64,000 nucleotides of DNA from Podarcis muralis (GCF_964188315.1 NC_135671.1:35712001-35776000), one strand, 5' to 3'; numbered from the stretch's first letter, positions 1,200 to 47,567 are shown. A program made the numbers and translations. The notes: generated by a model from the sequence alone, not told the origin.

Positions 1200-2220
1200 T
1201 GTACCAACCAAGCACGTACATAGATCAGCACAGGAAGACCGACCTGAAACCATTTTTGATTCCCAAACTGACCAAATGTTTCCTCTGCGGGGAGGGAGGG
1301 GGTCAGGGAGCCTTCCCATTGTCTCAGGAATTGCATAATTGGCATTTTAATGGGTGACAGACTATCAGATAACCTGGCAGCCAGGAAAAACAACATTCAA
1401 ATTTCTATTTTAGACCACCTTTTCTGTGATGTAGGTATGTGGGGGGTGGTCTTGAGCTGCACCCCTCCTGTGATGTATGTATGATGTTTCTGGGGGTGGT
1501 ATTGGGCTCCAGGGCTGGGAGTTTAAAATGTCTATATAAGGGCAGGCACACCTTTGTTCTGGGTTCCTCCTCCACTCCTGCGGGTGAGGGGAGCACCCTG
1601 TTGCAACAGATCAATAAAGATCAAGCTTACTAGCTGCTTTGCTTCTCAATATTCTCTGGTTGGTCCGTATAGTTAAAGCCATGGTTTTCCCAGTAGTGAT
1701 GTATGGAAGTGAGAGCTGGACCATAAAGAAGGCTGATCGCCGAAGAATTGATGCTTTTGAATTATGGTGCTGGAGGAGACTATTGAGAGTCCCATGGACT
1801 GCAAGAAGATCAAACCTCTCCATTCTTAAGGAAATCAGCCCTGAGTGCTCACTGGAAGGACAGATCCTGAAGCTGAGGCTCCAATACTTTGGCCACCTCA
1901 TGAGAAGAGAAGACTCCCTGGAAAAGACCCTGATGTTGGGAAAGATGGAGGGCACAAGGAGAAGGGGACGACAGAGGACGAGATGGTTGGACAGTGTTCT
2001 CAAAGCTACAAACATGAGTCTGACCAAACTGCGGGAGGCAGTGGAAGACAGGAGTGCCTGGCGTGCTCTGGTCCAGGGGGTCACGAAGAGTCGGACACGA
2101 CTAAACAACAACAACATTCTCTGGTTGACCTCTGTGATTTTCTCCTACCAATAGGGAACCTACGTAAGGACTCTATAAGGATACCCCATAAGGGGAAAAG
2201 GGCAGATTTTGTTTACAACA
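1200..2220 (+). mobile_element. Probable solo LTR interrupted by BovB
   Basis: TATATAA near 1533, AATAAA near 1613, ends ...TTTACAACA. The sequence is continuous across the BovB TSD. Left boundary approximate. Confidence 0.5.
1663..2115 (+). mobile_element. RTE-BovB LINE, 5'-truncated
   Basis: YGSESWTIKKADRRRIDAFELWCWRRLLRVPWT... BovB ORF end, (CAA)n tail, 12-bp TSD ATTCTCTGGTTG. Confidence 0.95.
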
Positions 2221-2235
2221 ATAACCACATAAAAA

Positions 2236-2425
2236 CTAAAAAAATTCCTTCCAGTAGCACCTTAAAGACCAACTAAGTTAGTTCTTGGTATGAGCTTTCG
2301 TGTGCATGCACACTTCTTCAGATACACTGAAACAGAAGTTGCCAGATCCTTCTATATAGTGAGAAGGTGGGGAGGGGTATTACTCAGAAGGGTGGTGGGA
2401 ATGGGTGATGGGCAGATAGCTGAGG
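2236..2425 (-). mobile_element. Penelope-like terminal (pseudo-LTR) fragment
   Basis: Reverse complement of about 7085-7250. Confidence 0.85.
2287..2327 (-). ncRNA. Minimal type-I hammerhead ribozyme motif (PLE-associated)
   Basis: GUAU-CUGAAGA-A-GUGUGC AU GCACAC-GAAA-GC-UC-AUAC: stem I, catalytic core, stem II and palindromic AGCU stem III. Confidence 0.7.
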
Positions 2426-2599
2426 CAGACCTATCTGTCACATAAAAACTACAGTACTGTACTAATGCTTCTGCAGATGCTGCCCAAGGCCAGATAAGCG
2501 ACCAGGCGACATTCCATCAACTGAGCAAGTTGAGTTGTTGACATTATTTATCTTGCATTTGGTAATTCGAAACGCTTCTCAGCCAACGCTTTCTAGCCT

Positions 2600-3130
2600 C
2601 CGCCCACAAATATTTCCAGCCGGAATACGCAAGGGAGACTGCCTTCGAAAGGGGCGGAGGAAGAATAAGACAACGCCGCTTTCCAGGAGCGGGGGAGATC
2701 CCCGCGCAACCAGCCAGGCTCCCCTTCCCCTCCGTTTCCACGGAAACAGCCGCCGCCCTCTGACCCCGGCGGTCACGTGGCGCCTGTCATGGCGGCCTCC
2801 TGGGCCGCGAAGGGCGGCGCTGGCGTCTCCCGGTGCCCGGGGCGCCGTCGGGTCCTGGCAGCGGCGGCCGGCCGGCTCCTGCCCCGGGGCTTCCGCACTG
2901 CAGGTGGGCGAGGAGAGAGCGGGGCTCCTCTCTCCCCAGGGGTCAGGGAAAGACTACCGGGATGCGGGGAGGCTGGTTGCTCTTTCTTCCCTCCCCTCCC
3001 CCTTCCCTGTAAACGGCCGTGAGTGCCCGTCGGGGAAAAGGCGGTGTGTCAATAAATGTACAACAACAACAACAGCACCACAACTTGGTCACGAAGCGAG
3101 GGGCGCCTCGGGATTCATCGGCGGTGTTTT
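2600..3130 (+). promoter_or_regulatory. FDX2 CpG-island promoter with E-box
   Basis: CpG-rich; GTCACGTGG at 2772-2780, about 10 nt upstream of the ATG. Confidence 0.7.
2789..2903 (+). CDS. FDX2: Ferredoxin-2 (FDX2/FDX1L) coding exon 1, mitochondrial targeting peptide
   Basis: ATG in a CpG island; MAASWAAKGG... resembles the mammalian FDX2 start (MAASMARGG). GT donor at 2904; 115 nt, phase 1, compatible with the next exon. Confidence 0.85.
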
Positions 3131-31915: not shown

Positions 31916-32498
31916 CTGCTGTGACGGTAACATATGAGAGTGCTGGAGGTGAAATAGTTAAACAGGTTACCCAATCAGAACCCAGGGGGGTGGAGTCAGA
32001 GGGACTATTAAACCAGCTCTGTGTGATGGCCTGGGATTCCGAGTCTGAGAGCGATCCGGAGGAATCCCAGCCGGCACAGGAGTCCCTGCCTCCAGGGCCG
32101 GCTGAACTGGGGCAAGGCCTAGATGCTGAGGAAACTCAAGAGCAGGCACCAGGTGAAATCATTCAGGCCCCAGAGGTGCTGGAAGACTCAGTGGCTACAG
32201 GTGAGCCTCCCCCGGGGCCCAGTAACCCTTCGGCCTCTCCTGATCTGCAGAGGCTTAGGGCAGAGAGGCGAAGGGAACTGGTGTCTCCCAGGAGGAGTGC
32301 TCGCCTTAAGGCCAAGAGAGGCGGGGCTTCTGGGGGCCGGGACCGCCCCCGGCCTTAGAAGAAGATAAAGGTCAGGCAGCCCGGTCCCAGGTTGCGGGAG
32401 CAACGTCGTTGTGGAGTACCTGTTTTACCCAGTCCTTGTTCGGCACCCCCAGTGTGCCTATTCCTCGCCCGGCTTCCTGTTTCTGACTCTCCGGTGTT

Positions 32499-32630
32499 CC
32501 TGTTCCTCGCCTGGATTCCTGCTTCTGCCCTACCAGTGCTCCTGTTCCTCGCCTGGACTCCTGCTTCTGCCCTACCAGTGTTCCTGTTCCTCGCCTGGCT
32601 ACCTGCTTCTGCCCTACCATCGTTCCTGTT
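32499..32630 (+). repeat. 42-bp tandem repeat (about 3 copies) inside the LTR; copy at 37611-37742
   Basis: CCTGTTCCTCGCCTGG... starts at 32499, 32541 and 32583. Confidence 0.9.
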
Positions 32631-32814
32631 ACCCCGCCCGGCTCCCTGTCTCGGACCTCGCGTCTCATCTAGTGATCATCTACCCTGCTAGAGACTCTGA
32701 ACTGATCTTGGCCTACGGTAATAGTACCTTATTCCCCCTGGGACCAGCACAGTTTGCTCCCGCCACACCCGCACTCCCTCTTTGTTGGGGTGCGTTCGGG
32801 AAGAGTCAGAGGCC

Positions 32815-35800
32815 ATGGCCGACCAAGCGGCTAGACTGTTGGCAATAGCCCAGGAGAACCAGGCCTTGACGCACACCGTGCAGCAGCTCAGTAACGCGGT
32901 TACGGCACTACAGCAGCGTTTGGACGCCCTACCGGCTCCTGGGGCCGACGCCCCGGCTTCTGGCAAGTACCCAGTGGCCTTGCCTGAGAAATTTGATGGG
33001 GCCCCGGCCAGCTTTCCCATGTTCCTTGCCCAGGCCAAGCTGTATATTCAGGGGCGCGCCCGGAACTTCCCTGACGACCGCACCAAGGTGCATTTTTTGA
33101 TTAGTTTGTTAAAGGACCAGGCGGCCAAGTGGGCGTTGCCGCTGCTCAGGCAAGACTCCCCCTTGCTGGCAGACTATGGGGGGTTTTGCAATCTGTTGGA
33201 GGCCGCGTTCGGCAACCCCCAGAAGGAGAGTCAAGCCAACCGGGCGATTCGGCGGTTGAGACAGGGCAAGTCCAAGGTGGCCGCATACACCACAGAATTC
33301 CGGCTGCTGGCACAGGACTTGACCTGGAATGACTCTGCTCTTCGGGACCAGTATCTCGAGGGGCTTTCAGATGAGATACTGGACCAGCTGGCCACAATGG
33401 AACGCCCCACCACGCTAGACACCCTTATTCAACAGAGTCTACAGATAGACGATCGGCTAGAGGACCGGCGTCAGGCTCGGGGCCGCCGGCACCTCCAGTT
33501 CTCGGCCCCAGTGTCTACCAGCAGCCCCACAGGCCCAGCTGAGTCATTGGAGGAACCTATGCAGCTTGAGGCAGTGCGGCCACGCCTCTCCCCCACAGAG
33601 AAGTCGCGGCGTCGGGAGGGGAACCTATGTCTCTATTGTGGCGGAAGCGGACACTATGCACGGTCCTGTCCTGAGAAACGCCAGCCGCAGGGAAACCGCC
33701 AAACCCCAGTAGCTGATGGCCCTGGCTACCTGGGGTCCCAAACAGCACAGAATGGGGCCGCACCAATTGAATTACAACACCTTATGGTTCTGGTACATCT
33801 ATACCCTCCAGGAGGGCCATGGATTCTTACCCATGCTCTGGTGGATTCAGGGGCAACCCGCTCTTATATGGACGCTGCTTTTGCTGCCCAGCATCGGGTG
33901 CCACTTCGGAACAAGCCAGAACCGGTACAGGTGGAGGCAATCGACGGACGGCCCCTGCGTTCGGGTGCCGTCACTCAGGAGACCCAGCCCCTGGTCCTGT
34001 GCCTCCAGCAGCACCGTGAGATGCGAACTCTGGATATTGCCTCCATGCCCCGGTTCCCCCTGGTGCTTGGGATGGACTGGCTGGAGGCTCACAATGTGCA
34101 GATTGACTGGGTCAAACGGACTGTACACTTCCCAGACCCCAGTTCTCCTGCTGAGACTGAGATGCTAGCAGCTGCGCCCACTGAGGAGGCTGCTGCAACG
34201 CTCCCCGCTGAGTACCGGGACTATCACGACGTGTTCGAGGAACGGGGGGCAGACCAGCTGCCGCCGCATCGGTCCTTTGACTGCGGCATAGACCTCCAGC
34301 CCGGAGCGCCTCTACCGGTGAGTCGCTTATACTCGTTAACAGAGCCAGAGCGCGAGGCTTTGCAGGACTTCTTGCGCAAGAACCTGGAGCGTGGGTTCAT
34401 TAGACCTTCTACCTCGCCCACTGCTGCGCCAGTGCTCTTTGTTAAAAAGAAATGTGGGGAGCTCCGCCTTTGCCATGATTACCGGGCCCTGAACAAAATT
34501 ACCATCCCGGACCGGTACCCCTTGCCCCTTATTTCAGAGTTACTGGAGCGGGTGCAAGGGGCGCAGGTGTTCACCAAGTTAGACCTCCGGGGAGCCTACA
34601 ATTTGATTCGGATCCGCGCCGGGGATGAGTGGAAGACAGCATTCGGGACCCGGTACGGACAGTTCGAATACCTGGTTATGCCCTTTGGTTTGTGCAACGC
34701 GCCTGCTGTGTTCCAACGGTACATCAACCACGTGTTCCAGGACTTGCTAGACAAGTACGTGGTGGTGTACTTGGATGACATTCTGGTTTACTCCCGTGAC
34801 CCGGCGTGCCACGAGGGCCATGTCCGGACCGTGCTGCAGCGCTTGCGCGAGCATCGTCTGTATGCAAAGCTCAGCAAGTGCGAGTTTCATCAGCGGTCAG
34901 TGGACTTCCTGGGTCACCGACTCTCACCAGGTGGGGTGCAGATGGATCCGGGGAAGGTGGCAGCGGTTCGAGAATGGGCGGCACCTCGGAACCGCAAGGA
35001 CCTACAGCGTTTCCTGGGGTTCGCCAACTATTACCGGACCTTCATTGCGGATTATGCTCACCGCACCATCCCGTTGACCCGGCTACTGCGCCCCAAGACA
35101 CCGTTTTCCTGGGACAAGGAGGCGGAGGAGGCATTTCAAGGGTTGAAGGCCTGTTTCCAGAGAGCGCCAATCTTGCAACATCCGGATCCTTCTCGACCCT
35201 TTGTGGTAGAGACTGACGCCTCCAGTACGGCTCTCGGTGCCGTCTTGTCTCAGCAGCACGGATCGGAAGCGCCACTCTTACCCTGCGCCTTCTATTCCCG
35301 CCAGCTCCTTCCAGCGGAGCGTAACTATACCGTGTGGGAGCGGGAACTACTGGCCATCAAGGTGGCCTTTGAGGTTTGGCGCCACCACCTGGAAGGAGCA
35401 AGACACCCGGTGGAGGTAAGAACCGACCACCGGAACCTGGAATACCTCCAGACCACCCGCAAGCTAAACCAAAGGCAGATCCGGTGGGCGTTGTTCTTCT
35501 CCCGGTTCCAGTTCCGGATCCGCTACATCCCTAGCTCCCAAAACCAGAAGGCGGATGCCCTGTCCCGGAAACCTGAAGACAACGCAGACACGGTTCAGCA
35601 AGCAGCACCCACCACGATCCTACCACCAGCTGCATTCCTGGCCACCCAGGAGGTTGAGCCACTGCAGGCTCGGGTGCGGGAACAGCAGCGGGTCGACGCT
35701 TGGGCCCAGGAACGACTCCGGGAACTGGCCGAAGGATCATGCCCTCAGTATCCAGGGCTGGTCTCGCATCAGGGCCTTCTGCTGCACCACGGGCGCCTGT

Positions 35801-37470
35801 ACATCCCACCAGGGCCGCTGCGGGCTGAGGTTCTCCGGATGACCCATGATGCTCCAGCGGCGGGGCACTTTGGGCGGTATCGGACCACCCATCTGGTAAG
35901 CCGTGAGTTTTGGTGGCCCCGTTTGAAGGCTGACGTGGCTCGCTACGTCGCTGGTTGTGAGGTCTGCAGGCGGGCCAAGGGGGCTACCGGGCGACCCCCC
36001 GGCCTTCTACAGCCGTTGCCGGTTCCACCACGTCCTTGGCACACAGTTTCTCTGGACTTTGTAGTGGAGTTACCCCCGTCTCGTGGCTGCACCTGCCTTC
36101 TAGTTTTCTCCGACCACTTCACAAAGATGGTGCACTGTGCCCCCTGCCCATCCGTACCCTCAGCTAAGGAAACCGCGCAGCTGTACCTTCAGCATGTCTT
36201 CCGCCTGCATGGCCTACCTGAGCGTGTAGTGTCCGACCGCGGCGTTCAGTTCACGTCCCGGTTTTGGCGTGCTTTGCACCAGGCCCTCGGAACAGAGGTC
36301 TGTCTCTCATCTGCTTACCACCCACAGACCGATGGCCAGACGGAACGGGCGAACGCGGTGCTGGAACAGTACCTCCGGTGTTACTGCAGCTACCAGCAGG
36401 ACGACTGGGTCGACCACCTAGCATTGGCGGAGTTCGCTTATAACAACGCGGTGAATGCGTCCACCCAGCAGACCCCGTTCCAGGCCAGTTATGGCTTTCA
36501 TCCACGGTTGTTTCCGGATGTGCTGCCGGCATCTGCGGTCCCTGCAGTGACGGAGTGGCTTCAGGAGCTCCAGTCCCAGCAACAGCTGTTGATGGAGCAG
36601 CTGTGCCAGGCCAAGGAGGCGTACAAGGTCCAGGCTGACCGCCACCGCCAGGTGGGGCCGGAACTTCACGTCGGTGACCTGGTATGGCTTTCCACTCGCC
36701 ACCTCCACCCTTCTCGACCTTCGCGGAAGCTGGACGCCCGGTTCACCGGCCCGTTCCCGATCGTGAACCAGGTCTCGCCTGTGGCATTCCGTCTCCGGTT
36801 GCCAGCAAACCTGAAGGTTCACCCGGTATTCCACAGGTCCCTGCTGAGTCCGGTGGCCCCACCCGACGAGTTCCACCCGGACCGTCCCCGACCGCAGCCA
36901 GTTTTGGTGCGGGGAGAGCCTGAGTACGAGGTGGAACGCATTCTGGACTCCCGATACCGCAGGGGAAGGCTGCAGTATCTCATTGACTGGAAGGGGTATG
37001 GGCCAGAGGACCGTTCCTGGGAACCAGCGGTCAACGTCCATGCGCCTGCCTGCATCCGAGAGTTTCATGCGGCGTACCCCAGCAAGCCGGGTCCGGACCC
37101 TCAAGTGAGGGGGGGGCCTGGGAGGGGGGATGGTGTGATGGCCTGGGATTCCGAGTCTGAGAGCGATCCGGAGGAATCCCAGCCGGCACAGGAGTCCCTG
37201 CCTCCAGGGCCGGCTGAACTGGGGCAAGGCCTAGATGCTGAGGAAACTCAAGAGCAGGCACCAGGTGAAATCATTCAGGCCCCAGAGGTGCTGGAAGACT
37301 CAGTGGCTACAGGTGAGCCTCCCCCGGGGCCCAGTAACCCTTCGGCCTCTCCTGATCTGCAGAGGCTTAGGGCAGAGAGGCGAAGGGAACTGGTGTCTCC
37401 CAGGAGGAGTGCTCGCCTTAAGGCCAAGAGAGGCGGGGCTTCTGGGGGCCGGGACCGCCCCCGGCCTTAG
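32815..37470 (+). CDS. Gag-Pol polyprotein (gag, CCHC knuckle, protease, RT, RNase H, integrase, chromodomain, U3-encoded tail), 1551 aa
   Basis: [14 protein letters not shown]; LVDSGAT; YLDD; RNase H ETDAS; HHCC (HDAPAAGH...CEVC) and DDE core; GPF; chromodomain [11 protein letters not shown]...[13 protein letters not shown]. No stop until 37468, which lies inside the 3' LTR. Confidence 0.95.
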
Positions 37471-38448
37471 AAGAAGATAAAGGTCAGGCAGCCCGGTCCC
37501 AGGTTGCGGGAGCAACGTCGTTGTGGAGTACCTGTTTTACCCAGTCCTTGTTCGGCACCCCCAGTGTGCCTATTCCTCGCCCGGCTTCCTGTTTCTGACT
37601 CTCCGGTGTTCCTGTTCCTCGCCTGGATTCCTGCTTCTGCCCTACCAGTGCTCCTGTTCCTCGCCTGGACTCCTGCTTCTGCCCTACCAGTGTTCCTGTT
37701 CCTCGCCTGGCTACCTGCTTCTGCCCTACCATCGTTCCTGTTACCCCGCCCGGCTCCCTGTCTCGGACCTCGCGTCTCATCTAGTGATCATCTACCCTGC
37801 TAGAGACTCTGAACTGATCTTGGCCTACGGTAATAGTACCTTATTCCCCCTGGGACCAGCACACTCTGGGAGGGACGAAGGGAGAGTTCTTTGGGTGGTT
37901 GGTTGGAGTGGGAGTGAATTGGGATAGAGTCTGTGGGTAGGTTGAGTGAGTGTAGCAAAATAAACTGAGTCAGGAACAGTTAGGAGCTAGGAAGACAAGT
38001 AAATATCTGAGAGGTGGTTTAGTGAGTTAGAGCAGGTAGTGGAACATATAGGTCTGGATAGGCACCCCATGATTGTAATTGACTGAGACCGTTTAAGAAA
38101 CCACACGCTTGTTAAACTGCAATAAATAAACAGAGGTTTATGTTCCAATTTAACCCTGACTGGACTCAGTATTTTACCAGGTAGGGCCTGGGTGGCGGCA
38201 GTGAGAAATAAAGTGGTGGCACAGGGATCAATGGACGATGAAACGTCCGGGGACCCTGTGTGATCGTCACAGAAAAGTGGCGGCAGCGGCAGGATTCGAT
38301 AAGTCTAAGAGCCTGTGAGGGGAAGCAATACACCTGGAGAGGGGAAGGGTAAATCGGTGAAGTGATTACCTGGGCCGAGGGTGTGATTGAGGTAAACCCC
38401 AGATTGCCATGAAGCCGAGATCACAATAAGAGCAAGAGATCTCAGAAG

Positions 38449-39040
38449 TGTGATGGCCTGGGATTCGGACTCGGATGCTGAACCTGAGGAATCCCAGCCT
38501 GCACAGGATTCCCCGCCTCCAGAACCATCTGAGTCGGGGCTGGAGCTTGAGCCTGAAGGGTCCTCACCTGTGCTGGATCCTCAGGTGCAGGCACCAGCTG
38601 AGTCTTCTCTGGCTCCTGAGAGGATGGAGGACCCATTGTCTGCAGGTGCTCCACTCTCAGTCCCATTAGGGGAAGATGAGGTTACCTCTGGGTCCGGTAA
38701 CCCTCCAGCCTCTCCTGAACTGCAGAGGCTCAGGGCAGAGAGGCGGAGGGAAGTAAGTTCCCGCAGGAGGAGTGCTCGCCTCCAGGCCAGTGGACCTGGG
38801 CCGCCCTATGCCTTGGGGCAGATAAAAGCCAGCCAGCCCCAGTCCCAAGTTGCAGGAGCAACATTGTTGGTAGCCAGTTCCTGCCTGAACCCTGTCCTGC
38901 TTTCTTGCTGGAGCTCCTCACCTCACCCTACTCCCTGCCCTGTGCCCAGCTTCAGCTTTGATGGACTGCCTCCATGCTGCACCTTCGACCTTGGACTGGA
39001 CTCAGACCTCGCCTCACGGTTAACCCACGGGACCAGCACA
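38449..39040 (+). mobile_element. Solo LTR of a diverged sister subfamily of the sushi-type element
   Basis: Same termini (TGTGATGGCCTGGGATTC...GGGACCAGCACA) and a 5-bp TSD AGAAG. Confidence 0.92.
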
Positions 39041-39223
39041 AGAAGACTGTTCTGGCAGAGGCTTAGGGTCAGGGTCAGTGGAAGTAAGCTTGCAAGGTTA
39101 GAGGCAAAAACCTAAAGCTATACTTTGAGGACCAGGGTCTTGAAAAGCCAAGCCGGGAGGAACAGTGTTGAGAGTAAAATTCTCTTATTTAATTAATTAG
39201 TGCAAAATACTAACTCACACATA

Positions 39224-40370
39224 ATGCCCCCCAAGAAGACCAAGCACCCCGTGAGAGAAAACCCATACGAAAGCTCTGGGGAAGAGAATGGGAATCCCCA
39301 GGGGGAGGAAACGAGAATGGAAGAGATGACTAAAACCCCACCTGAAGTAGAAGTTCCACAGTTCTCAGAGGATTTTGAAAAGTGGAAATTTGTACAAGAA
39401 TATAACTTGAAATTAGAGCTTGAGAAAACTAGAACTGAACAAGACTTGGAAAAAGAAAAAGAAAAATTGAGGCTTGAGCAAGAATTGGAAAAAGAAAAAT
39501 TGAGGGCTGAGCAGGAAAGGGAACAGCAGCGGTTTCAGTTAGAGATGAGATGGTTGGAATTAACGGTATGATTGGAAAATCAAAATAATAGTAATAAAAC
39601 CAATGGGCAGAACCAAATGAAGATAGATTTAAAACGCTTTCCTGAGTTTAGGCATAAGGATAGCCCAGAAGCATTTTTAGTATCCTTTGAGAGAGCCTGT
39701 CACAATTTTCAAGTGAGAGAGGAAGATAAAATGATGATCTTGAGAGCTAGAATAAGTGGTCCTCTAGCTGAAATATATGCACAAATGACTGAGGAACAAT
39801 CCCGAAATTTTGAGGTGTACAAGCAGTTAATATACACCCACTTTGGGATTACCTCAGAGCAGTTGAGAAAAATTTTTAGAAGTGTGACAAAGGTGAGGGA
39901 GGAAACCTATGTGCAGCTGGGTGCAAAGATAAAAACTTACCTCACGAGATGGTAAGAGCAAGAGAATGCAGACACGGTACCAAAGATTAGGGAAGTGATA
40001 GCGTTGGAGCAATTTTACGACACAATAAATGGCCAATTGAAGTACCTGATAAAAGAAAGGAACCGCAAGACAATAGAGGAAGCAGCTGGTTTAGCCGATA
40101 AAATAAATGAAATGGCCCACGGATTTGTTGGGCCAAAATTTGGTAGGAGATATTGGGAAACAAACAAGAATAAATTTCAGCAAACCAAAGGAAAGATTAC
40201 CTCAGAAACTGATAAGAGAAGTAGCTCCTCTTCAAAAAGCCAACATGAGAAGGCACACACCCATACGGAGTTTACTGAGGGAAAAGTCAATAAAACAAGT
40301 TATGCAGGACCCAAAGACATTTGACGCTGGAGATGTGGAAAATTAGGTCGTAAAAGTTTTGATTGTAAAA
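39224..40370 (+). pseudogene. Gmr1-like gag with coiled coil, SCAN-like domain and degenerate CCHC knuckle
   Basis: One frame with three in-frame stops (39569, 39953, 40322). ITSEQLRKIFR...RW*...IALEQFYDTI..QLKYLIKERNRKTIEEAAGLAD matches the SCAN pattern (LEQF...W..E..P...EEA..L). Confidence 0.8.
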
Positions 40371-41071: not shown

Positions 41072-42013
41072 CTAGGACTGTTGAAGAAAGACCCTCTTTC
41101 CCAGGAGACCCCACAGAGCTTCCTTGACATCTTTGTTCCTGAGGCTGTAGATGTAAGGGTTGGACATTGGGGTGATGACAGTGTACACCACAGCAAAGAC
41201 AGCCCCTCGCTGGGATGAGTAGCTGGATGTTGGCAAAAAGTAGACAGCAATGATAGCTCCATAGAAGAGGGTCACCATGGTGAGGTGGGAGCCACAAGTG
41301 GAGAAAGCTTTGCGCCTCCCCGATGAAGATAACTTCATCACAGCTACCACAATGCGGACGTAGGTGAGGATGACTAACACAAAAGGTCCAAGAACGACGA
41401 TGACACCTTCAAAGAAGATGACGGCTTCATTGACACTGGTGTCTGAGCAGGACAGCTGCAGGAGGGGCTGATGGTCACAAAAGTAATGGAACAAGTGGTT
41501 GTCCCCACGATAACTGAGACGCAGGAGGAGGCTGGCATGGAGCATGGAGTGGAGGGTAGAAACAATCCAGCAGCCAGCTACCAGGTGTCCACAGACCTTC
41601 TGGTTCATTACCGTGGTGTAGTGTAGTGGATTGCAAATTGCAACATAGCGATCCAGAGCCATGACGCTCACTATCAGAAGGTCAGTCACGCCAAACACGT
41701 AGAAGAAGAAGAACTGAGCCATGCAGCAGTAGAAAGGGATAGTCTTGGAAGTGGAGATGATGTGAGCCAACATCTGAGGCACAGTGACTGATAGGAAGCC
41801 CACATCCACCACCGAGAGGCTCCGAAGCAAGAAATACATGGGAGTCTGGAGTCGGGCATCCAGAGAGATGAGAATGATCATCATGATGTTGCCCAGAAGT
41901 CCTGCTCCATACATCAGCAGAAAGATTAGGAACAAGAGTGGCTGCTCTTTAGGCTGGGTGGAAAAACCCAGAAGGACAAACTCGACGATGTCTGTGCCAT
42001 TCTCACAGTCCAT
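41072..42013 (-). CDS. Olfactory receptor (class II, family-1-like), 313 aa, copy B
   Basis: Same motifs; about 14 substitutions plus a one-codon indel versus copy A (manual count). Confidence 0.93.
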   Translation of the reverse strand: MDCENGTDIVEFVLLGFSTQPKEQPLLFLIFLLMYGAGLLGNIMMIILISLDARLQTPMYFLLRSLSVVDVGFLSVTVPQMLAHIISTSKTIPFYCCMAQFFFFYVFGVTDLLIVSVMALDRYVAICNPLHYTTVMNQKVCGHLVAGCWIVSTLHSMLHASLLLRLSYRGDNHLFHYFCDHQPLLQLSCSDTSVNEAVIFFEGVIVVLGPFVLVILTYVRIVVAVMKLSSSGRRKAFSTCGSHLTMVTLFYGAIIAVYFLPTSSYSSQRGAVFAVVYTVITPMSNPYIYSLRNKDVKEALWGLLGKRVFLQQS

Positions 42014-45000
42014 GGGACCTGCAGAGAGAAACACACCACACAGCTGGCATGAGCCAAAGGGCTTCATAGCATAGTTTCCTGCCTAGAGGAAGGCCCATCT
42101 AACACAACACTGAAAGGGATGGTTCAGTGGTTAAGATTGCAAATTTTGGAACACAGATTCTGAGGTTGAACTCTCAGTATGTGAATTTTGGCCTTTTTAC
42201 ATTTGTTGAGCAGTCTTTTTGTTTTGTGGTTTTATCAGGTGGAAAATGTGGAATGCCATTAACAAACTGTCAGCTACCAAATACTATCAAATCCTTTGGA
42301 TACTGCCCACCATTTCATATCAACAATAAAGTACTGTCAACATTTCTAAATACGATACCATATAGAGAATCAAATATTTTTGCTTAATAAATATTCTGGC
42401 ATAGCTACCGTTAAATACTAGGTGGTCATTTCCCCCCTCATTCAGTTGTTTGGATATTGATAAAGGTCATCTCCTCCTAAACCAGAGATGGGGGACTTGT
42501 CGTCTTCCAGCTGTTGTTGGACCTCAACTCTCACCTGCCCCAGGTAGCACAGCCAACAGTCAGGGATGATGGAAGTTGAAGTTCAACATCTGAAGGACAC
42601 AGGTTATCCACTCCTGCTCTGAACTATCCTTTCCTGCTTACAATGATTCTCCAGTTTTGTTACATTATATCTGGCTAATGACCACCAGTCACACTCATTG
42701 TTTCAACACACCTATTTGTTTGTGGCTCCACCTTGACAGTTTTCATAGGATGGAACAAGAAACAACACGCGACAAGCTGTGATGACCTGGTGCATTTCCC
42801 AATTCTTAAAATTATTTTATAATTATTAAAAAATGAAAAAAATGGTTCAGGGCTGCCTTTAATGTGCTTTCAACACTTAATGATGCACTATATTGAGTAA
42901 AGCCATTGGTTTACCTTGCCCAGTCATCTCTACTGTGACTGGCAGCAGTGTCCCAAGATCTTGGGTCGAGATTGCCCCCAATGAGTCAATTTAAGAGTAT
43001 TTGTCGTGATCGGGAATCTGTGGAACAAAGTAACATATTCACATGGCATGCATTATCTTTTGCAACCTGATGATGCCATGGAAAACCAAGGCAATAACTG
43101 ATCAAAGAAGAATCTGACAGATTCAGGGACCACAGGGCACATGTGAATGAAGTATAGAGAGCCAATGACTGAGTGGGGGAAAGTGGATAGCAGATAATCT
43201 TTTAGCCCTGTGCCTCTTACTAGACAGTCAAGTGCAACAGCAGATATATAGACAGAAGATGGGGAGGGAGAGAGAGAGGGAGACACAGAACATAATTTTT
43301 AGTGGTGGTGAGCCATGTTCTAAAATATGGGTTTGCTGTTATCACGTCTAGTAAGATCACATCATAGTCTGATCACAAAGTTTCATGGATATTGAATTGG
43401 ATGTAGGGATTTTTGAATCTGTCCATTTTGGTTCCTTTAGTTCCTGTAATCTTAAATTCAATTCTCCACATTCCTACATCAGTGTCCTTTTTAGTTTATG
43501 TCCGTGTGATAATTCATCAGGATTTTAGTGCAATTTCCCTCCAATTTGCATATTTTATATGCACGCTTTTACAAAGCAAATTGTAATGCAATTTTGTATG
43601 TTCTTTTTGGTAATATATGCATTTTTTATGAGCACTTTGCCTAGTAAATTCATTTTTGTACACATTACTTGACTGGAGAACCACAATGCAAAGTTCAGAG
43701 AAGCATGAAATTTGAAGGATGGCTTTGTTTCAGTTTTCATGTGGCTTCTGAAAGTGTGGATTAAGTAGCCCACCCTCTTCCCGCAATAACTCTTGCTCTC
43801 ACTCTCTAATCTCCCATGGACCCACTCTTTCTGCCTGCACAAGCTCCCATTCAAATTCTCGCTCTCCTCCTCCCACCAGACCCACTGTCTGCCCATGCAA
43901 TTTTGAGAAGGAGCCTGAATATGTGAAGAAAAAGTAGTTGTGTTTGAAGTCCAAACAGGACAGGGGACACTTTTCTCAAAAAAGAAAAGAAAAAGACACT
44001 CACATTTTTTTAGGGATGGGTGGCAACCCTAGCTAACACTTGCTTTGAAGTATCATGCAGTATCTCTGCACACAAATCAGAATGAATGCTAATTAAATCC
44101 CCATTATCATCTAATCTCTTTGCAAATTAATAAACAGGTTTTCTGGAAGCAGTCTATTAGTCTGCTCCAGTGCAAACAATGAAGGGGGCTTCCTGATGGC
44201 TGTTTATTGTAGGATCAGAGTTCCTCATGCATGCAAAGGCGTGTTTGTTTTTTTTTGCAGAGGACACACCACATTGTTGTGATGTTTCAAGGACCCATTT
44301 GCAAGTTATGCCCTCATCTGAAAGCACCCAAAGAGGTGGAAGACTGCGGTAAACACTTGCCCCGCCCCCCAAATGGGGCAGTATAATTCACAATAACAAG
44401 CTTAAGATGTGAAGGTGAGCAATCAAGCTGAAACTACAGCACATATTAGAGGTCTTCTACTGTCCCACAATCACTTTACCTATTTTGTGGTCCCATATAT
44501 CAAATGTCCACATTTTACATCCTTGTGCACAACATATCCACAGGCTTTTCATTCACAGATCTCTGTTGCTCATGCCTATAGGAACATACACAAGAGCATT
44601 TTCTCTCCAAACTATTGCTGGGCTGATCTTGCGTCAGAAGGGCTGCCTTGCCTTGCCTTGGTCTGGGCCAGACAAATTCAGTCCCACCACAGACTCGCAT
44701 TCTGTCTCATCTAGCTGATGAAGGTCTAAATAAAGGGTGCCTAGCACACTGTTACAGGCATTGTGTTAAAAGTTAATGGGGCATCAGAGACAGTGGCATG
44801 CCTCAAGATGGTAACTAAATCCATCCTTACCTGCCTCTGTTTGGATGCTCTTAACTCCTCGCCCACTTGATCTTCAGGCTTGAACAAAAGCACTGGGTAA
44901 AATGGAACAAAACCCAACAGAACTGCTTTGCTTAAGTATCTCTAAGTTCTGATAAGAAACAGGAAGGGTCTCGTTAAAGGATTTGCATTGGGAGCCTGTA

Positions 45001-47567
45001 GAGATCTCTCACAAGCCACTTGAGAATAGCTGCTCTTCAACTCTAAAAAGAAAACTTAGCAATCGTGTTCTATATATCAAGTATAAAAATTCCACCCTTT
45101 CCCCAGCTTATGTTTCCCCCCATAAACTGGATTGTATCATATCTGTTTACATGAAATCAGGCCACCAAAGATTGCAACAGACTACAACCGACCTTGCTTT
45201 TTAACCTCTATGGATTCAGCTAGACTGGTAACGAAAAGCAATTTATATGTGTTGTATGTGCAATATGAAAGGAACATTTCGTACAAAGATTACCATAATA
45301 AAGGACAAAAGTGGTAAGGACCTAACAGAAGCAGAAGACATCAAGAAGAGGTGACAAGAATACACAGAGGAATTATACCAGAAAGGTATGGATGGCTCGT
45401 ATACCCTAGGTAGTGTGGTTGCTGACCTTGAGCCAGACATCCTGGAGAGTGAAGTCAAATGGGCCTTGGAAAGCACTGCAAATAACAAGGCCAGTGGAAG
45501 TGATGGTATTCCAGCTGAACTATTTAAAATTTTAAAAGATGATGCTGTTAAGGTGCTACACTCAATATACCAGCAAGTTTGGAAAACTCAGCAGTGGCCA
45601 GAGGATTGGAGAAGATCAGTCTACATCCCAATCCCAAAGAAGGGCAGTGCCAAAGAATGCTCCAACTACCGCACAATTGCACTCATTTCACACGCTAGCA
45701 AGGTTATGCTTAAAATTCTACAAGGAAGGCTCAAGCAGTATGTGGGCCGAGAACTCCCACAAGTGCAAGGGGCAGAGGAACCAGAGACCAAATTGCAAAC
45801 ATGCGCTGGATTATGGAGAAAGCTAGAGAGTTCCAGAAAGACATCTACTTCTGCTTCATTGACTATGCAAAAGCCTTTGACTGTGTCAACCACAGCAAAC
45901 TATGGCAAGTTCTTAAAGAAATGGGAGTGCCTGATCACCTCATCTGTCTCCTGAGAAATCTGTATGTGGGACAAGAAGCTGCAGTTAGAACTGGATATGG
46001 AACAACTGATTGGTTCAAAATTGGGAAAGGAGTACGACAAGGCTGTATATTGTCTCCCTGCTTATTTAATTTATATGCAGAATTCATCATGCGAAAGGCT
46101 GGATGAATCCCAAGCCAGAATTAAGATTGCCAGAAGAAATATTAACAACCTCAGATATGCAGATGACACAACCTTGATGGCAGAAAGTGAGGAGGAATTA
46201 ACGAACCTTTTATTGAGGGTGAAAGAGGAGAGCACAGAATATGGTCTGAAGCTCAACATAAAAAAAATGAAGATCATGGCCACTGGTCCCATCACCTCCT
46301 GGCAAATAGAAGGGGAAGAAATGGAGGCAGTGAGAGATTTCCCTTTCTTAGGCTCCATGATCACTGCAGATGGTGACAGCAGTCACGAAATTAAAAGACG
46401 CCTGCTTCTTGGGAGAAAAGCAATGACAAACCTAGACAGCATCTTAAAAAGTAGAGACATCACCTTGCCAACAAAGGTCTGTATAGTAAAAGCTATGGTT
46501 TTCCCAGTAGTGATGTATGGAAGTGAAAGCTGGACCATAAAGAAGGCTGATCGCTGAAGAATTGATGCTTTTGAATTATGGTGCTGGAGGAGACTCTTGA
46601 GAGTCCCATGGACTGCAAGAAGATCAAACCACTCCATTCTTAAGGAAATCAGCCCTGAGTGCTCACTGGAAGGACAGATTGTGAAGCTGAGGCTCTAATA
46701 CTTTGGCCACCTCATGAGAAGAGAAGACTCCCTGGAAAAGACCCTGATGCTGGGAAAGATGGAGGGCACAAGGAGAAGGGGACGACAGAGGACGAGATGG
46801 TTGGATAGTGTTCTCGAAGCTACCAACATGAGTTTGATCAAACTGCGGGAGGCAGTGGAAGACAGAAGTGCCTGGTGTGCTTTGGTCCATGGCAGGGGCG
46901 CCGACTTATAAAAAATATTGGGGGGGCCCATACCGGGGTCCCGCCCCGGGAAGTTTTCTAAGTTCCCCGCAGGGCGGGGCCGCTGCAGAAGGGTGAGTGG
47001 CGAGGGCGGGATGGGGCCGCGCGCTCCTTTCCTCGGCTGCCCTCGTCGCGGGCCTTGGCTCCCGCGGCCGGCGAGGGGAGCCCGGGCCGCGCGCGGCTGC
47101 TGCTGCCGCCGCCGCCACCTCTCCTGGGGGCGCCGCCTCCCCGGGCGGGAACGCTGCGGGTGCGCGAGGGATGCCATGGGGTATTATTTTCACCTTGCTT
47201 TTTTAAAAAGGAAAACAAGCCACACTTTACTAAATGTACGCAAAACACCTGGAACATGCAGCTCTTTAGATGGCAATGAAGGTGGTGAGAATGGAGAAGT
47301 GATGATCTCATTGCCCTCTGGATTTTGGGTTAAATATTTGAGAGAATAAGCTTTATCGTAAAGCAGGTTTTAGAAACGAAACTCACCCTGATAAGGCCCA
47401 TCTAAGGACTAAATGCCATCTACATAACATGCCCAGAATCTTATGTTTTTTTGCAAGTCATGTTGTTCTGCCAAAACGCAGGCTAAAATGACTGCATGGA
47501 AAACGTGGCATGCTAATAGCGATTTGAAGTTAAATATTCATACTGATGAATAGCTATATCAGCAGAG

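What the first reader, a model, noticed from the sequence alone, without database searches (positions are those of the whole stretch)
37071..37470. Integrase reads through the PPT into U3 and gains a 110-aa tail with an HMGN-like RRSARL motif
Seen: the Pol frame has no stop after the chromodomain. It crosses the PPT and the LTR edge (TGTG-ATG at 37138, in frame) and ends at 37470, adding an acidic/Pro-rich stretch and then [25 protein letters not shown] (RRSARL at 37402-37419). In the 5' LTR this frame lies upstream of the GATAAA box (32364), so it could be translated only from the 3' U3 copy, as with MMTV sag or HIV nef overlapping U3. Established: RRSARLSA is the invariant core of the HMGN nucleosome-binding domain that docks on the H2A/H2B acidic patch, and KSHV LANA and foamy Gag use similar arginine anchors. 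Inference: this lineage may have a two-part chromatin tether (chromodomain plus arginine anchor/NLS) encoded in the LTR. I do not recall this being described for sushi-type elements.
Basis: partly seen in the sequence, partly recalled or inferred. Interest (0 to 1): 0.85.

Follow-up and report, generated by a model that had tools for sequence, protein, structure and literature searches.

The report
LTR-encoded HMGN-like tail on integrase
A young, intact lizard retrotransposon makes its integrase about 110 amino acids longer by reading into its own 3' LTR, and this extra tail is kept by selection and ends in a motif almost identical to the one HMGN proteins use to grip nucleosomes, though that grip has not been tested.

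Summary
The element at 32022-37863 is an intact chromovirus (Ty3/gypsy). It has identical 730-nt LTRs, a 5-bp target-site duplication and one Gag-Pol ORF. That ORF passes the chromodomain and the polypurine tract, enters 3' U3 and stops at 37470, 5 nt before the GATAAA box.

The tail is a selected coding sequence:
- Three diverged LTR lineages (two in the window, one from Podarcis muralis) keep only this frame open.
- The large indels between the two window lineages (18 and 30 nt) keep the frame.
- pN/pS is 0.37-0.58 in this frame and 1.0-1.7 in the shifted frames.
- Differences pile up at third codon positions.
- SP.LQRLR.ERRR....RRSARL[KQ]A is conserved. RRSARL[KQ]A matches the HMGN core RRSARLSA at 7 of 8 positions.

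All tail homologues found were from Podarcis. A frog chromovirus tail ends in RRSPRLQARSGP. Two other vertebrate chromoviruses from Logan assemblies also read into U3.

An integrase ORF running into the 3' LTR to encode a targeting motif is already known from plant CRM group A elements, so this is a new variant of a known kind. Acidic-patch binding remains an inference. A nuclear localisation signal is the main rival. RNA data were too thin to show the transcript's ends or any splicing.

The parts
32022..32751 (+). 5' LTR (730 nt, TGTG...CACA). It holds a silent copy of the tail ORF (ATG 32026 to TAG 32358) upstream of GATAAA at 32364.
   Evidence: 100% identical to 37134-37863; sequence read
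32017..32021 (.). Target-site duplication CTCTG. The second copy is at 37864-37868.
   Evidence: read
32782..37470 (+). Single Gag-Pol ORF (first ATG 32815): capsid/DUF4939, CCHC, PR, RT, RNase H, IN (H2C2, rve, SH3_Tf2-1), chromodomain, then the U3 tail
36922..37077 (+). Chromodomain. The Y, W and Y at the aromatic-cage positions are all present (EYEVERI...DWKGYG).
   Evidence: Pfam Chromo E=1e-14; sequence; the cage assignment rests on knowledge of HP1
37107..37133 (+). Polypurine tract GAGGGGGGGGCCTGGGAGGGGGGATGG, translated as RGGPGRGDG
37134..37863 (+). 3' LTR. U3 up to the GATAAA box is entirely coding.
37138..37356 (+). Acidic, Pro-rich part of the tail (73 aa, pI 4.05). The N-terminal MAWDS.S...EE.Q.A is conserved; the middle varies in length by in-frame indels.
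37357..37392 (+). Conserved basic segment [12 protein letters not shown]
37402..37425 (+). HMGN-like motif RRSARLKA
   Evidence: compared with RRSARLSA, RRSSRLTS and RRSARIAT
37468..37481 (+). Stop codon TAG (37468-70) followed by the GATAAA box (37476-81)
38449..38869 (+). Diverged LTR of a sister lineage (D), with no PPT upstream. The same frame is open (38450..39115). [11 protein letters not shown] is at 38720-52 and RRSARL at 38765-82.

Best explanation
The 110 codons after the LTR edge are a real C-terminal extension of the integrase. They are translated from the full-length genomic RNA, whose 3' end carries U3.

The integrase therefore ends with four parts in order:
- a chromodomain with its full aromatic cage;
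- a Gly/Arg stretch encoded by the PPT;
- a disordered acidic, proline-rich spacer of about 73 aa;
- a basic segment of 37 aa holding [12 protein letters not shown] and RRSARL[KQ]A.

Shown: the frame is kept open and evolves under purifying selection in several LTR lineages, and the motif block is the most conserved part.

Inferred: the RRSARL arginines dock on the H2A-H2B acidic patch of the target nucleosome, as the HMGN, Dsup and Dot5 motifs do, while the chromodomain holds a methylated H3 tail. Together they would give the intasome a two-point hold on chromatin. The same basic stretch may also help nuclear import.

Because U3 is copied to both ends of the element, this coding sequence also lies upstream of the promoter, and the ORF ends 5 nt before the TATA-like box.

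Rough odds: selected coding tail 0.85; translated as part of Pol 0.75; acidic-patch anchor about 0.45.
For: - Continuous ORF in a very young copy with identical LTRs and a target-site duplication.
- Five tail variants A to E in Podarcis keep the frame and the motif.
- Only this frame of six is stop-free in lineages A, D and E.
- pN/pS is 0.58, 0.37 and 0.48, with bootstrap upper limits of 0.84, 0.48 and 0.62. The shifted frames give 1.0-1.7.
- Nucleotide alignments made without regard to frame give differences by codon phase of 18/11/26, 19/11/32 and 25/20/37, and the large A-D indels are 18 and 30 nt.
- In the motif block, D against E differs 8/0/16 by codon position, and one arginine codon reads CGA, CGG or AGG.
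- Pol reads into the tail in lineages A, B and C and in two other vertebrate chromoviruses, L002 and L004/L005. L002 has no ATG at the LTR edge.
- Frog copies keep LRRSPRLQARS while 12 of 76 tail residues vary between two copies.
- HMGN-like motifs with the same R-R-S-x-R spacing bind the acidic patch in experiments (PMC12487698 and PMC13347269).
- The motif-coding part of U3 is the LTR part best represented in genomic contigs, at a depth of about 26,000 against 2,000-3,000 for R/U5.
Against: - There is no protein or binding evidence.
- Pfam HMG14_17 does not match the tail, and neither does any PDB chain or the ESM Atlas.
- The nearest relative outside Podarcis (L002, 57% identity) has the same acidic-then-basic layout but RRRWDRRRQQK in place of RRSARL. 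A generic basic cluster may therefore be enough.
- The 18 nt coding RRSARL are nearly invariant as DNA and lie 50-75 nt upstream of the TATA-like box, so a promoter element could add to their conservation.
- Full-length elements of lineages D and E were not available, so fusion to Pol is shown only for the closely related lineages A, B and C and for more distant vertebrate elements.
- RNA coverage was 0-4 reads deep inside the element, with no start or splice information.
Confidence: 0.5

Rival explanations
1. The basic end of the tail is mainly a nuclear localisation signal for integrase or the pre-integration complex, as with the C-terminal bipartite NLS of Ty1 integrase. Its likeness to HMGN is then incidental.
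For: [18 protein letters not shown] fits the bipartite pattern of two basic residues, a spacer of 10-12, then three basic residues in five (sequence). The nearest outgroup has a different arginine cluster at the same place. The frog tail is arginine-rich throughout.
Against: Lineage D has RLQAS as its second cluster, which breaks the bipartite pattern, yet it keeps RRSARL exactly. NLSs usually tolerate much sequence change, while S, A and L inside the motif are invariant in lineages A to E. The two functions do not exclude each other.
Confidence: 0.22
2. The U3 frame encodes a separate small protein that starts at the ATG at the LTR edge. It would be made from a spliced or read-through transcript, more like nef or sag, or it is joined to Gag from the 5' LTR as some gene models propose.
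For: The ATG at 37138 has G at -3 and G at +4 and is kept in the lizard lineages; the frog tail likewise begins GGVM. Gene models start there: P0016, P0017, P0019/P0026 (LOC114604991) and P0020. RNA reads run from varied flanks into the LTR start (loose ends at 37134).
Against: L002 and L005 have no ATG at the LTR edge yet keep the tail open. No splice joint was seen in the RNA reads, although depth was low. The GT-AG intron of P0017 is the kind of site a gene predictor can find by chance. Transcription from upstream of a 5' LTR is not part of the element's life cycle, and TGTGATG is also the LTR terminus that integrase must recognise.
Confidence: 0.08
3. The tail is a harmless read-through. 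The frame is open by chance in GC-rich DNA, and the conserved block is a promoter or enhancer element of U3, not a peptide.
For: U3 is 64% G+C and a single stop-free run has p = 0.037. The conserved block lies about 50-140 nt upstream of the TATA-like box. The RRSARL codons are almost invariant as DNA.
Against: Only this frame of six is open in three lineages. Differences are in excess at third positions and fewest at second positions. pN/pS is below 1 only in this frame. The large A-D indels are 18 and 30 nt. Arginine and leucine codons change synonymously inside [11 protein letters not shown].
Confidence: 0.06

Closest known systems
Plant centromeric chromoviruses, CRM clade group A (CR motif)
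   Same: [quoted passage not shown] Both are chromoviruses.
   Different: In CRM group A the CR motif stands in place of the chromodomain, and its partner is unknown. Here a chromodomain with its full aromatic cage is kept and the LTR adds a second, unrelated module. The host is a vertebrate. Sequence similarity to the CR motif was not tested.
HMGN nucleosome-binding domain and HMGN-like motifs of tardigrade Dsup and yeast Dot5
   Same: The core RRSARL[KQ]A compares with RRSARLSA (7 of 8), RRSSRLTS and RRSARIAT. Arginines 1, 2 and 5, shown to be essential in Dsup and Dot5, sit at the same spacing.
   Different: There is no homology outside the 8 residues, and Pfam HMG14_17 gives no hit. The motif sits in a retrotransposon integrase and is encoded in an LTR. 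Binding has not been tested.
Viral arginine-anchor chromatin tethers (KSHV LANA 1-23, foamy virus Gag chromatin-binding sequence)
   Same: A short arginine motif on a viral or retroelement protein that would dock on the H2A-H2B acidic patch (from my own knowledge; LANA is named in PMC13347269).
   Different: Those motifs sit on an episome-maintenance protein and on Gag, not on integrase, and their sequences differ.
Integrase C-terminal tails that choose targets or import (MLV IN with BET proteins, Ty1 IN bipartite NLS, Ty5 IN targeting domain)
   Same: A disordered C-terminal peptide of integrase carries a short host-interaction motif (MLV-BET: PMC4027182 came up; the rest is from my own knowledge).
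   Different: The partners are different, and none of these tails is encoded in U3.
HIV nef and MMTV sag (ORFs overlapping U3)
   Same: Coding sequence overlaps U3 of the 3' LTR.
   Different: Those are separate genes with their own start codons and mRNAs. Here the sequence continues pol in the same frame.

Membership tests
Chromovirus (Ty3/gypsy LTR retrotransposon with a chromodomain) | LTRs ending in TG...CA, flanked by a short target-site duplication | tested here: met
   730-nt LTRs, 100% identical, TGTG...CACA, duplication CTCTG
Chromovirus (Ty3/gypsy LTR retrotransposon with a chromodomain) | Domain order Gag-PR-RT-RNase H-IN, with a chromodomain at the integrase C-terminus | tested here: met
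   Pfam hits in that order; Chromo E=1e-14 at residues 1374-1421
HMGN-like nucleosome-binding motif | R-R-S-x-R-L core with arginines at positions 1, 2 and 5 | tested here: met
   RRSARLKA or RRSARLQA in lineages A to E. Reference motifs come from PMC12487698 and PMC13347269.
HMGN-like nucleosome-binding motif | Binding to the nucleosome acidic patch that is lost when the arginines are mutated | not testable with these tools
   No histone sequence could be supplied to the complex predictor. The cryo-EM paper reports that AlphaFold 3 models HMGN2 on the nucleosome poorly.
HMGN protein family (Pfam HMG14_17) | Profile match to the HMG14/17 domain | tested here: not met
   No Pfam family at E <= 0.1 for the tail. 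No PDB chain at E <= 10.
LTR-encoded integrase targeting domain (CRM group A type) | Pol ORF continues past the PPT into the 3' LTR | tested here: met
LTR-encoded integrase targeting domain (CRM group A type) | The CR motif is present and takes the place of the chromodomain | tested here: not met
   The chromodomain is present.
Separate U3 accessory gene (nef or sag type) | Its own start codon, used from a dedicated spliced mRNA | tested here: inconclusive
   An ATG is present at the LTR edge, but no splice joints were seen at very low RNA depth. Related elements lack the ATG.

The most novel reading that the evidence does not exclude
An RRSxR arginine anchor placed after the chromodomain is an old and recurrent second nucleosome contact of chromoviral integrases. 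It is found at the very C-terminus in a fungal-type clade (PRRSSAR.R.G*). In frog and lacertid elements it has moved into U3. Retrotransposons would then have evolved the HMGN nucleosome-binding motif independently, or shared it with host genes, and would use it together with H3K9me reading to pick integration sites.
Probability: 0.2. Interest if true: 0.85.

Novelty: new variant of a known kind. Interest (0 to 1): 0.62.

Why it matters
How LTR retrotransposons choose chromatin is known for only a few cases: chromodomain with H3K9me, Ty5 with Sir4, Ty1 and Ty3 with Pol III factors, and MLV with BET proteins. An integrase carrying both a histone-tail reader and an HMGN-type acidic-patch anchor would be a compact two-point nucleosome tether. 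It comes from an element that looks active today and can be tested directly with a peptide of about 40 residues.

The finding also adds a candidate to the wider set of HMGN-like motifs that the Dsup/HMGN structure paper predicted. It gives a vertebrate example of a U3 that must serve at once as coding sequence, integrase recognition end and promoter-upstream region.

Solo LTRs carrying this ORF, with its ATG at the LTR edge, already appear as first coding exons in Podarcis gene models. They could hand a chromatin-binding peptide to host genes.

Tried and rejected
- PDB sequence search with the tail: no hit at E <= 10.
- ESM Atlas: no usable hit.
- Pfam on both window tails: nothing.
- Profile search of 1.84 billion cluster representatives: 9 hits. 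Eight are Podarcis proteins, and the ninth is a weak match (E = 6e-4) to a repetitive protein that I did not follow up.
- Two further protein searches aimed at the tail found only Podarcis proteins.
- Exact 18-mer scan of metagenome contigs: 25 hits, all chance matches with no homology to the LTR or Pol.
- The look-up of encoding contigs failed for P0019 and worked for its longer isoform P0026.
- Read laying on the whole element: RNA depth was too low to place the transcript start or poly(A) site, or to test the intron of gene model P0017. Only 40 of 441 variant positions were printed, so a codon-phase test on family variants was not possible.
- AlphaFold2 on the chromodomain plus tail as a single sequence: mean pLDDT 50. 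The tail is disordered, with low-confidence helices over the basic segment. This settles nothing.
- Capture of a host HMGN exon was considered and set aside. Nothing outside the 8-residue core is similar, and the frog variant has RRSPRL.
- align_proteins printed a majority line for the two tail peptides on its own. I did not use it and built no consensus.

Full report
**Anatomy**

The window holds a complete LTR retrotransposon at 32022-37863.
- Its two LTRs are 730 nt long, 100% identical and end in TGTG...CACA.
- They are flanked by a 5-bp duplication, CTCTG, at 32017-21 and 37864-68.
- One ORF runs from 32782 (first ATG 32815) to the TAG at 37468-70.
- Pfam places these domains on it in order: a Ty3/PEG10-type capsid (DUF4939), a CCHC knuckle, protease, RT, RNase H, integrase (H2C2, rve, SH3_Tf2-1) and a chromodomain at residues 1374-1421 of the 1554-aa product.
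- The chromodomain has Y, W and Y at the aromatic-cage positions (sequence; the assignment rests on knowledge of HP1).

So this is an intact, very young chromovirus of the sushi/PEG10-like kind.

**Check of the observation**

There is no stop after the chromodomain. The frame passes through the G-rich polypurine tract (37107-33, read as RGGPGRGDG) and crosses the LTR edge at 37134, and the ATG at 37138 is in frame. The frame then continues for 110 codons to TAG, 5 nt before the GATAAA box at 37476.

The tail has two parts:
- a 73-aa acidic, proline-rich part (18 D/E, no K/R, pI 4.05);
- a 37-aa basic part (14 K/R, pI 12) containing [12 protein letters not shown] (37357-92) and RRSARL (37402-19).

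For a single copy, a stop-free run of this length and composition has p = 0.037, so the weight lies in the comparisons below.

**Is the tail a coding sequence?**

DNA was available for three diverged LTR lineages:
- A, the element itself;
- D, an LTR 585 bp downstream at 38449-38869, about 65% identical in DNA and with no PPT in front of it;
- E, a solo LTR in Podarcis muralis that was fetched because a Gnomon gene model starts in it (L001:10001-10429).

The evidence for coding is as follows.
- In all three lineages the Pol frame is the only one of six without stops. The other frames have 1 to 10 stops each.
- A nucleotide alignment of A and D made without regard to frame has large gaps of 18 and 30 nt. 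The remaining single-base gaps come in adjacent compensating pairs.
- Differences by codon phase are 18/11/26 (A-D), 19/11/32 (A-E) and 25/20/37 (D-E). Second positions change least and third positions most.
- Nei-Gojobori pN/pS in the Pol frame is 0.58, 0.37 and 0.48, with bootstrap upper limits of 0.84, 0.48 and 0.62. The same columns read in the two shifted frames give 1.0 to 1.7.
- In the 31-codon block from SNP to RL.A, D and E differ at 8, 0 and 16 first, second and third positions. One arginine codon reads CGA, CGG or AGG and one leucine codon reads CTT, CTC or CTA.

This is the signature of a translated sequence under moderate purifying selection, strongest at the two ends of the tail and weakest in the spacer. 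The three pairs are not independent, and the protein-guided alignment of the spacer could flatter the numbers. The frame-blind alignments nonetheless show the same pattern.

**Is it part of integrase?**

Seven predicted Podarcis muralis proteins read from the chromodomain into the tail, and five of them (P0001, P0008, P0013, P0014, P0015) carry it complete to the same end. P0018 and P0021 break off part-way through. They represent three sub-lineages (A, B, C) that differ by an in-frame 6-codon indel and by several substitutions. The tail region is about 81% identical between P0001 and the window, against 93% for the whole alignment. So the tail evolves faster than the enzyme, yet it keeps its frame and its motif.

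Two more distant vertebrate chromoviruses, assembled from public runs, have the same arrangement:
- L002 (Pol 57% identical) reads through GGGGGAAGGG...GAGGGGGGATGG into an LTR that starts TGTTGTGG. It adds a 100-aa acidic-then-basic tail that stops just before a TATTTA box.
- L004/L005 adds a 55-aa basic tail.

Neither has an ATG at the LTR edge. That argues against the tail being a separate gene.

A frog (Leptobrachium) family has a 75-aa tail after ...GGVM that ends in LRRSPRLQARSGP. Two copies differ at 12 of 76 tail residues but at none in that motif. This ending is close to RRRSARLQASGPGP of lizard lineage D.

I could not obtain full-length elements of lineages D and E, so for those two lineages fusion to Pol is assumed and not shown.

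**Expression**

Raw RNA-seq reads from the same species label cover the inside of the element thinly, at 0 to 4 reads deep. Most lie in the orientation expected for sense transcripts if the library is of the usual stranded kind. No splice joints and no clustered read starts or ends were seen, and depth was too low for that absence to mean much. The claim that the 5' copy of the ORF lies upstream of the transcript start rests on the position of the GATAAA box alone.

In genomic contigs the motif-coding part of U3 has a summed depth of about 26,000. The inside of the element has about 800 and R/U5 has 2,000-3,000. The tail-coding DNA is therefore the part of the LTR best represented in the genome at 90% likeness or better.

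**What the motif may do**

RRSARL[KQ]A matches the vertebrate HMGN core RRSARLSA at 7 of 8 positions. Cryo-EM shows that the RRSAR of HMGN2 and the RRSSR of tardigrade Dsup sit in the H2A-H2B acidic patch, with the last arginine as the anchor. Mutating the arginines of Dsup, or of the RRSARIAT motif of yeast Dot5, abolishes nucleosome binding (PMC12487698 and PMC13347269). The lizard motif has all three arginines at the same spacing, is invariant in five tail variants, and sits on a protein whose job is to engage chromatin.

I therefore think the most likely mechanism is a second nucleosome contact that adds to the chromodomain. I give this about 0.45.

The main rival is a nuclear localisation signal. 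[18 protein letters not shown] fits the bipartite pattern, and the nearest outgroup (L002) has a different arginine cluster, RRRWDRRRQQK, in the same place. Against this, lineage D breaks the bipartite pattern while keeping RRSARL exactly. The two roles could also coexist.

A promoter element overlapping these codons may add to their DNA-level conservation, but it cannot explain the frame-specific pattern.

There is no HMGN homology beyond the core, so convergence is more likely than capture of a host exon.

**Comparison with what is known**

An integrase ORF that runs into the 3' LTR to encode a targeting motif is established for plant centromeric chromoviruses of CRM group A (PMC3059260). 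The architecture is therefore not new in kind.

Three things differ here:
- the chromodomain is retained and the LTR adds a second module;
- that module carries an HMGN-type motif;
- the host is a vertebrate.

A full-text search for papers that combine acidic patch, retrotransposon, integrase and chromodomain found only reviews and the MLV-BET work, and nothing on this arrangement. I rate the finding a new variant of a known kind.

**A wider lead, weakly supported**

Among 78 relatives found through the integrase C-terminus, 7 have RRS.{1,2}R after the chromodomain, against 1.7 expected from shuffled tails. Four of those belong to one fungal-type clade that ends in PRRSSAR.R.G* just upstream of its PPT. 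That leaves only about four independent lineages, and the pattern was chosen after seeing the data.

**Limits**

- All tail homologues found come from Podarcis, apart from one weak hit (E = 6e-4) to a repetitive protein that was not followed up.
- No binding, proteomic or transcript-end evidence exists.

Noticed in passing
L001:10001-10429 (Podarcis muralis OZ076963.1), and proteins P0019/P0026: A solo LTR of lineage E supplies the start codon and the first 128 or so codons, RRSARLQAKQGG included, of a Gnomon gene model (LOC114604991, two isoforms). The model splices from a GT just after the motif. An A-type solo LTR (96.8% identical) lies in its intron on the other strand.
   Followed up: partly
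proteins P0016, P0017, P0023, P0148 (Podarcis muralis gene models): Gene models join the U3 ORF of a 5' LTR to gag through a predicted GT-AG intron. In the window the donor CTG|GTGTCT is near 32285 and the acceptor AG is near 32805. No RNA read supported this joint at the low depth available.
   Followed up: partly
proteins P0020 (Podarcis lilfordi) and P0022 (P. muralis): Pieces of the U3 tail ORF appear inside host gene models. One forms the N-terminus of a V2R-like receptor fragment and one sits inside a CEP63/Deup1-like protein.
   Followed up: no
proteins P0051, P0137-P0146 (Podarcis muralis): A second, more distant chromovirus family of the same lizard has a tail of about 200 aa after its chromodomain. 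The tail is very acidic (DEEEELEGF..SEEEEDS..) and then basic (RRKLPRRESRRRVSVKELL). Whether it is encoded in U3 was not checked.
   Followed up: no
L003:5070-5115 and proteins P0072, P0073, P0074, P0076: A fungal-type chromovirus clade (one member is from Podosphaera aphanis) ends right after the chromodomain with PRRSSAR[IFR]R[GR]G*, or RRSSRRLEEG* in P0074. In L003 this motif lies just upstream of and partly overlaps the PPT.
   Followed up: partly
window 37503-37784 (also 32391-32672): Four tandem copies of a 42-nt unit (CCTGTTCCTCGCCTGG.TCCTGCTTCTGCCCTACCAGTG-like) lie in the LTR downstream of the GATAAA box. Genomic contigs show length variants there.
   Followed up: no
window 41072-42067 (-): An intact 331-aa ORF with the hallmarks of an olfactory receptor (MALDRYVAICNPLHY, PMSNPYIYSLRNK).
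   Followed up: no
window 39200-40324 (+): A run of AT-rich ORFs just after the D-lineage LTR. One of them (KRFPEFRHKDSPEAFLVSFERACHNFQ...) looks like a SCAN or retroviral-capsid-like domain, but Pfam gave no hit at E <= 0.1.
   Followed up: partly
window 45388-46557 (+): Overlapping ORFs that look like a decayed non-LTR (LINE-type) reverse transcriptase.
   Followed up: no
window 37199: The window copy has T (Leu in ESLPPGP) where nearly all genomic contigs and RNA reads have C (Pro, ESPPPGP). This is a private or rare change in this copy.
   Followed up: partly
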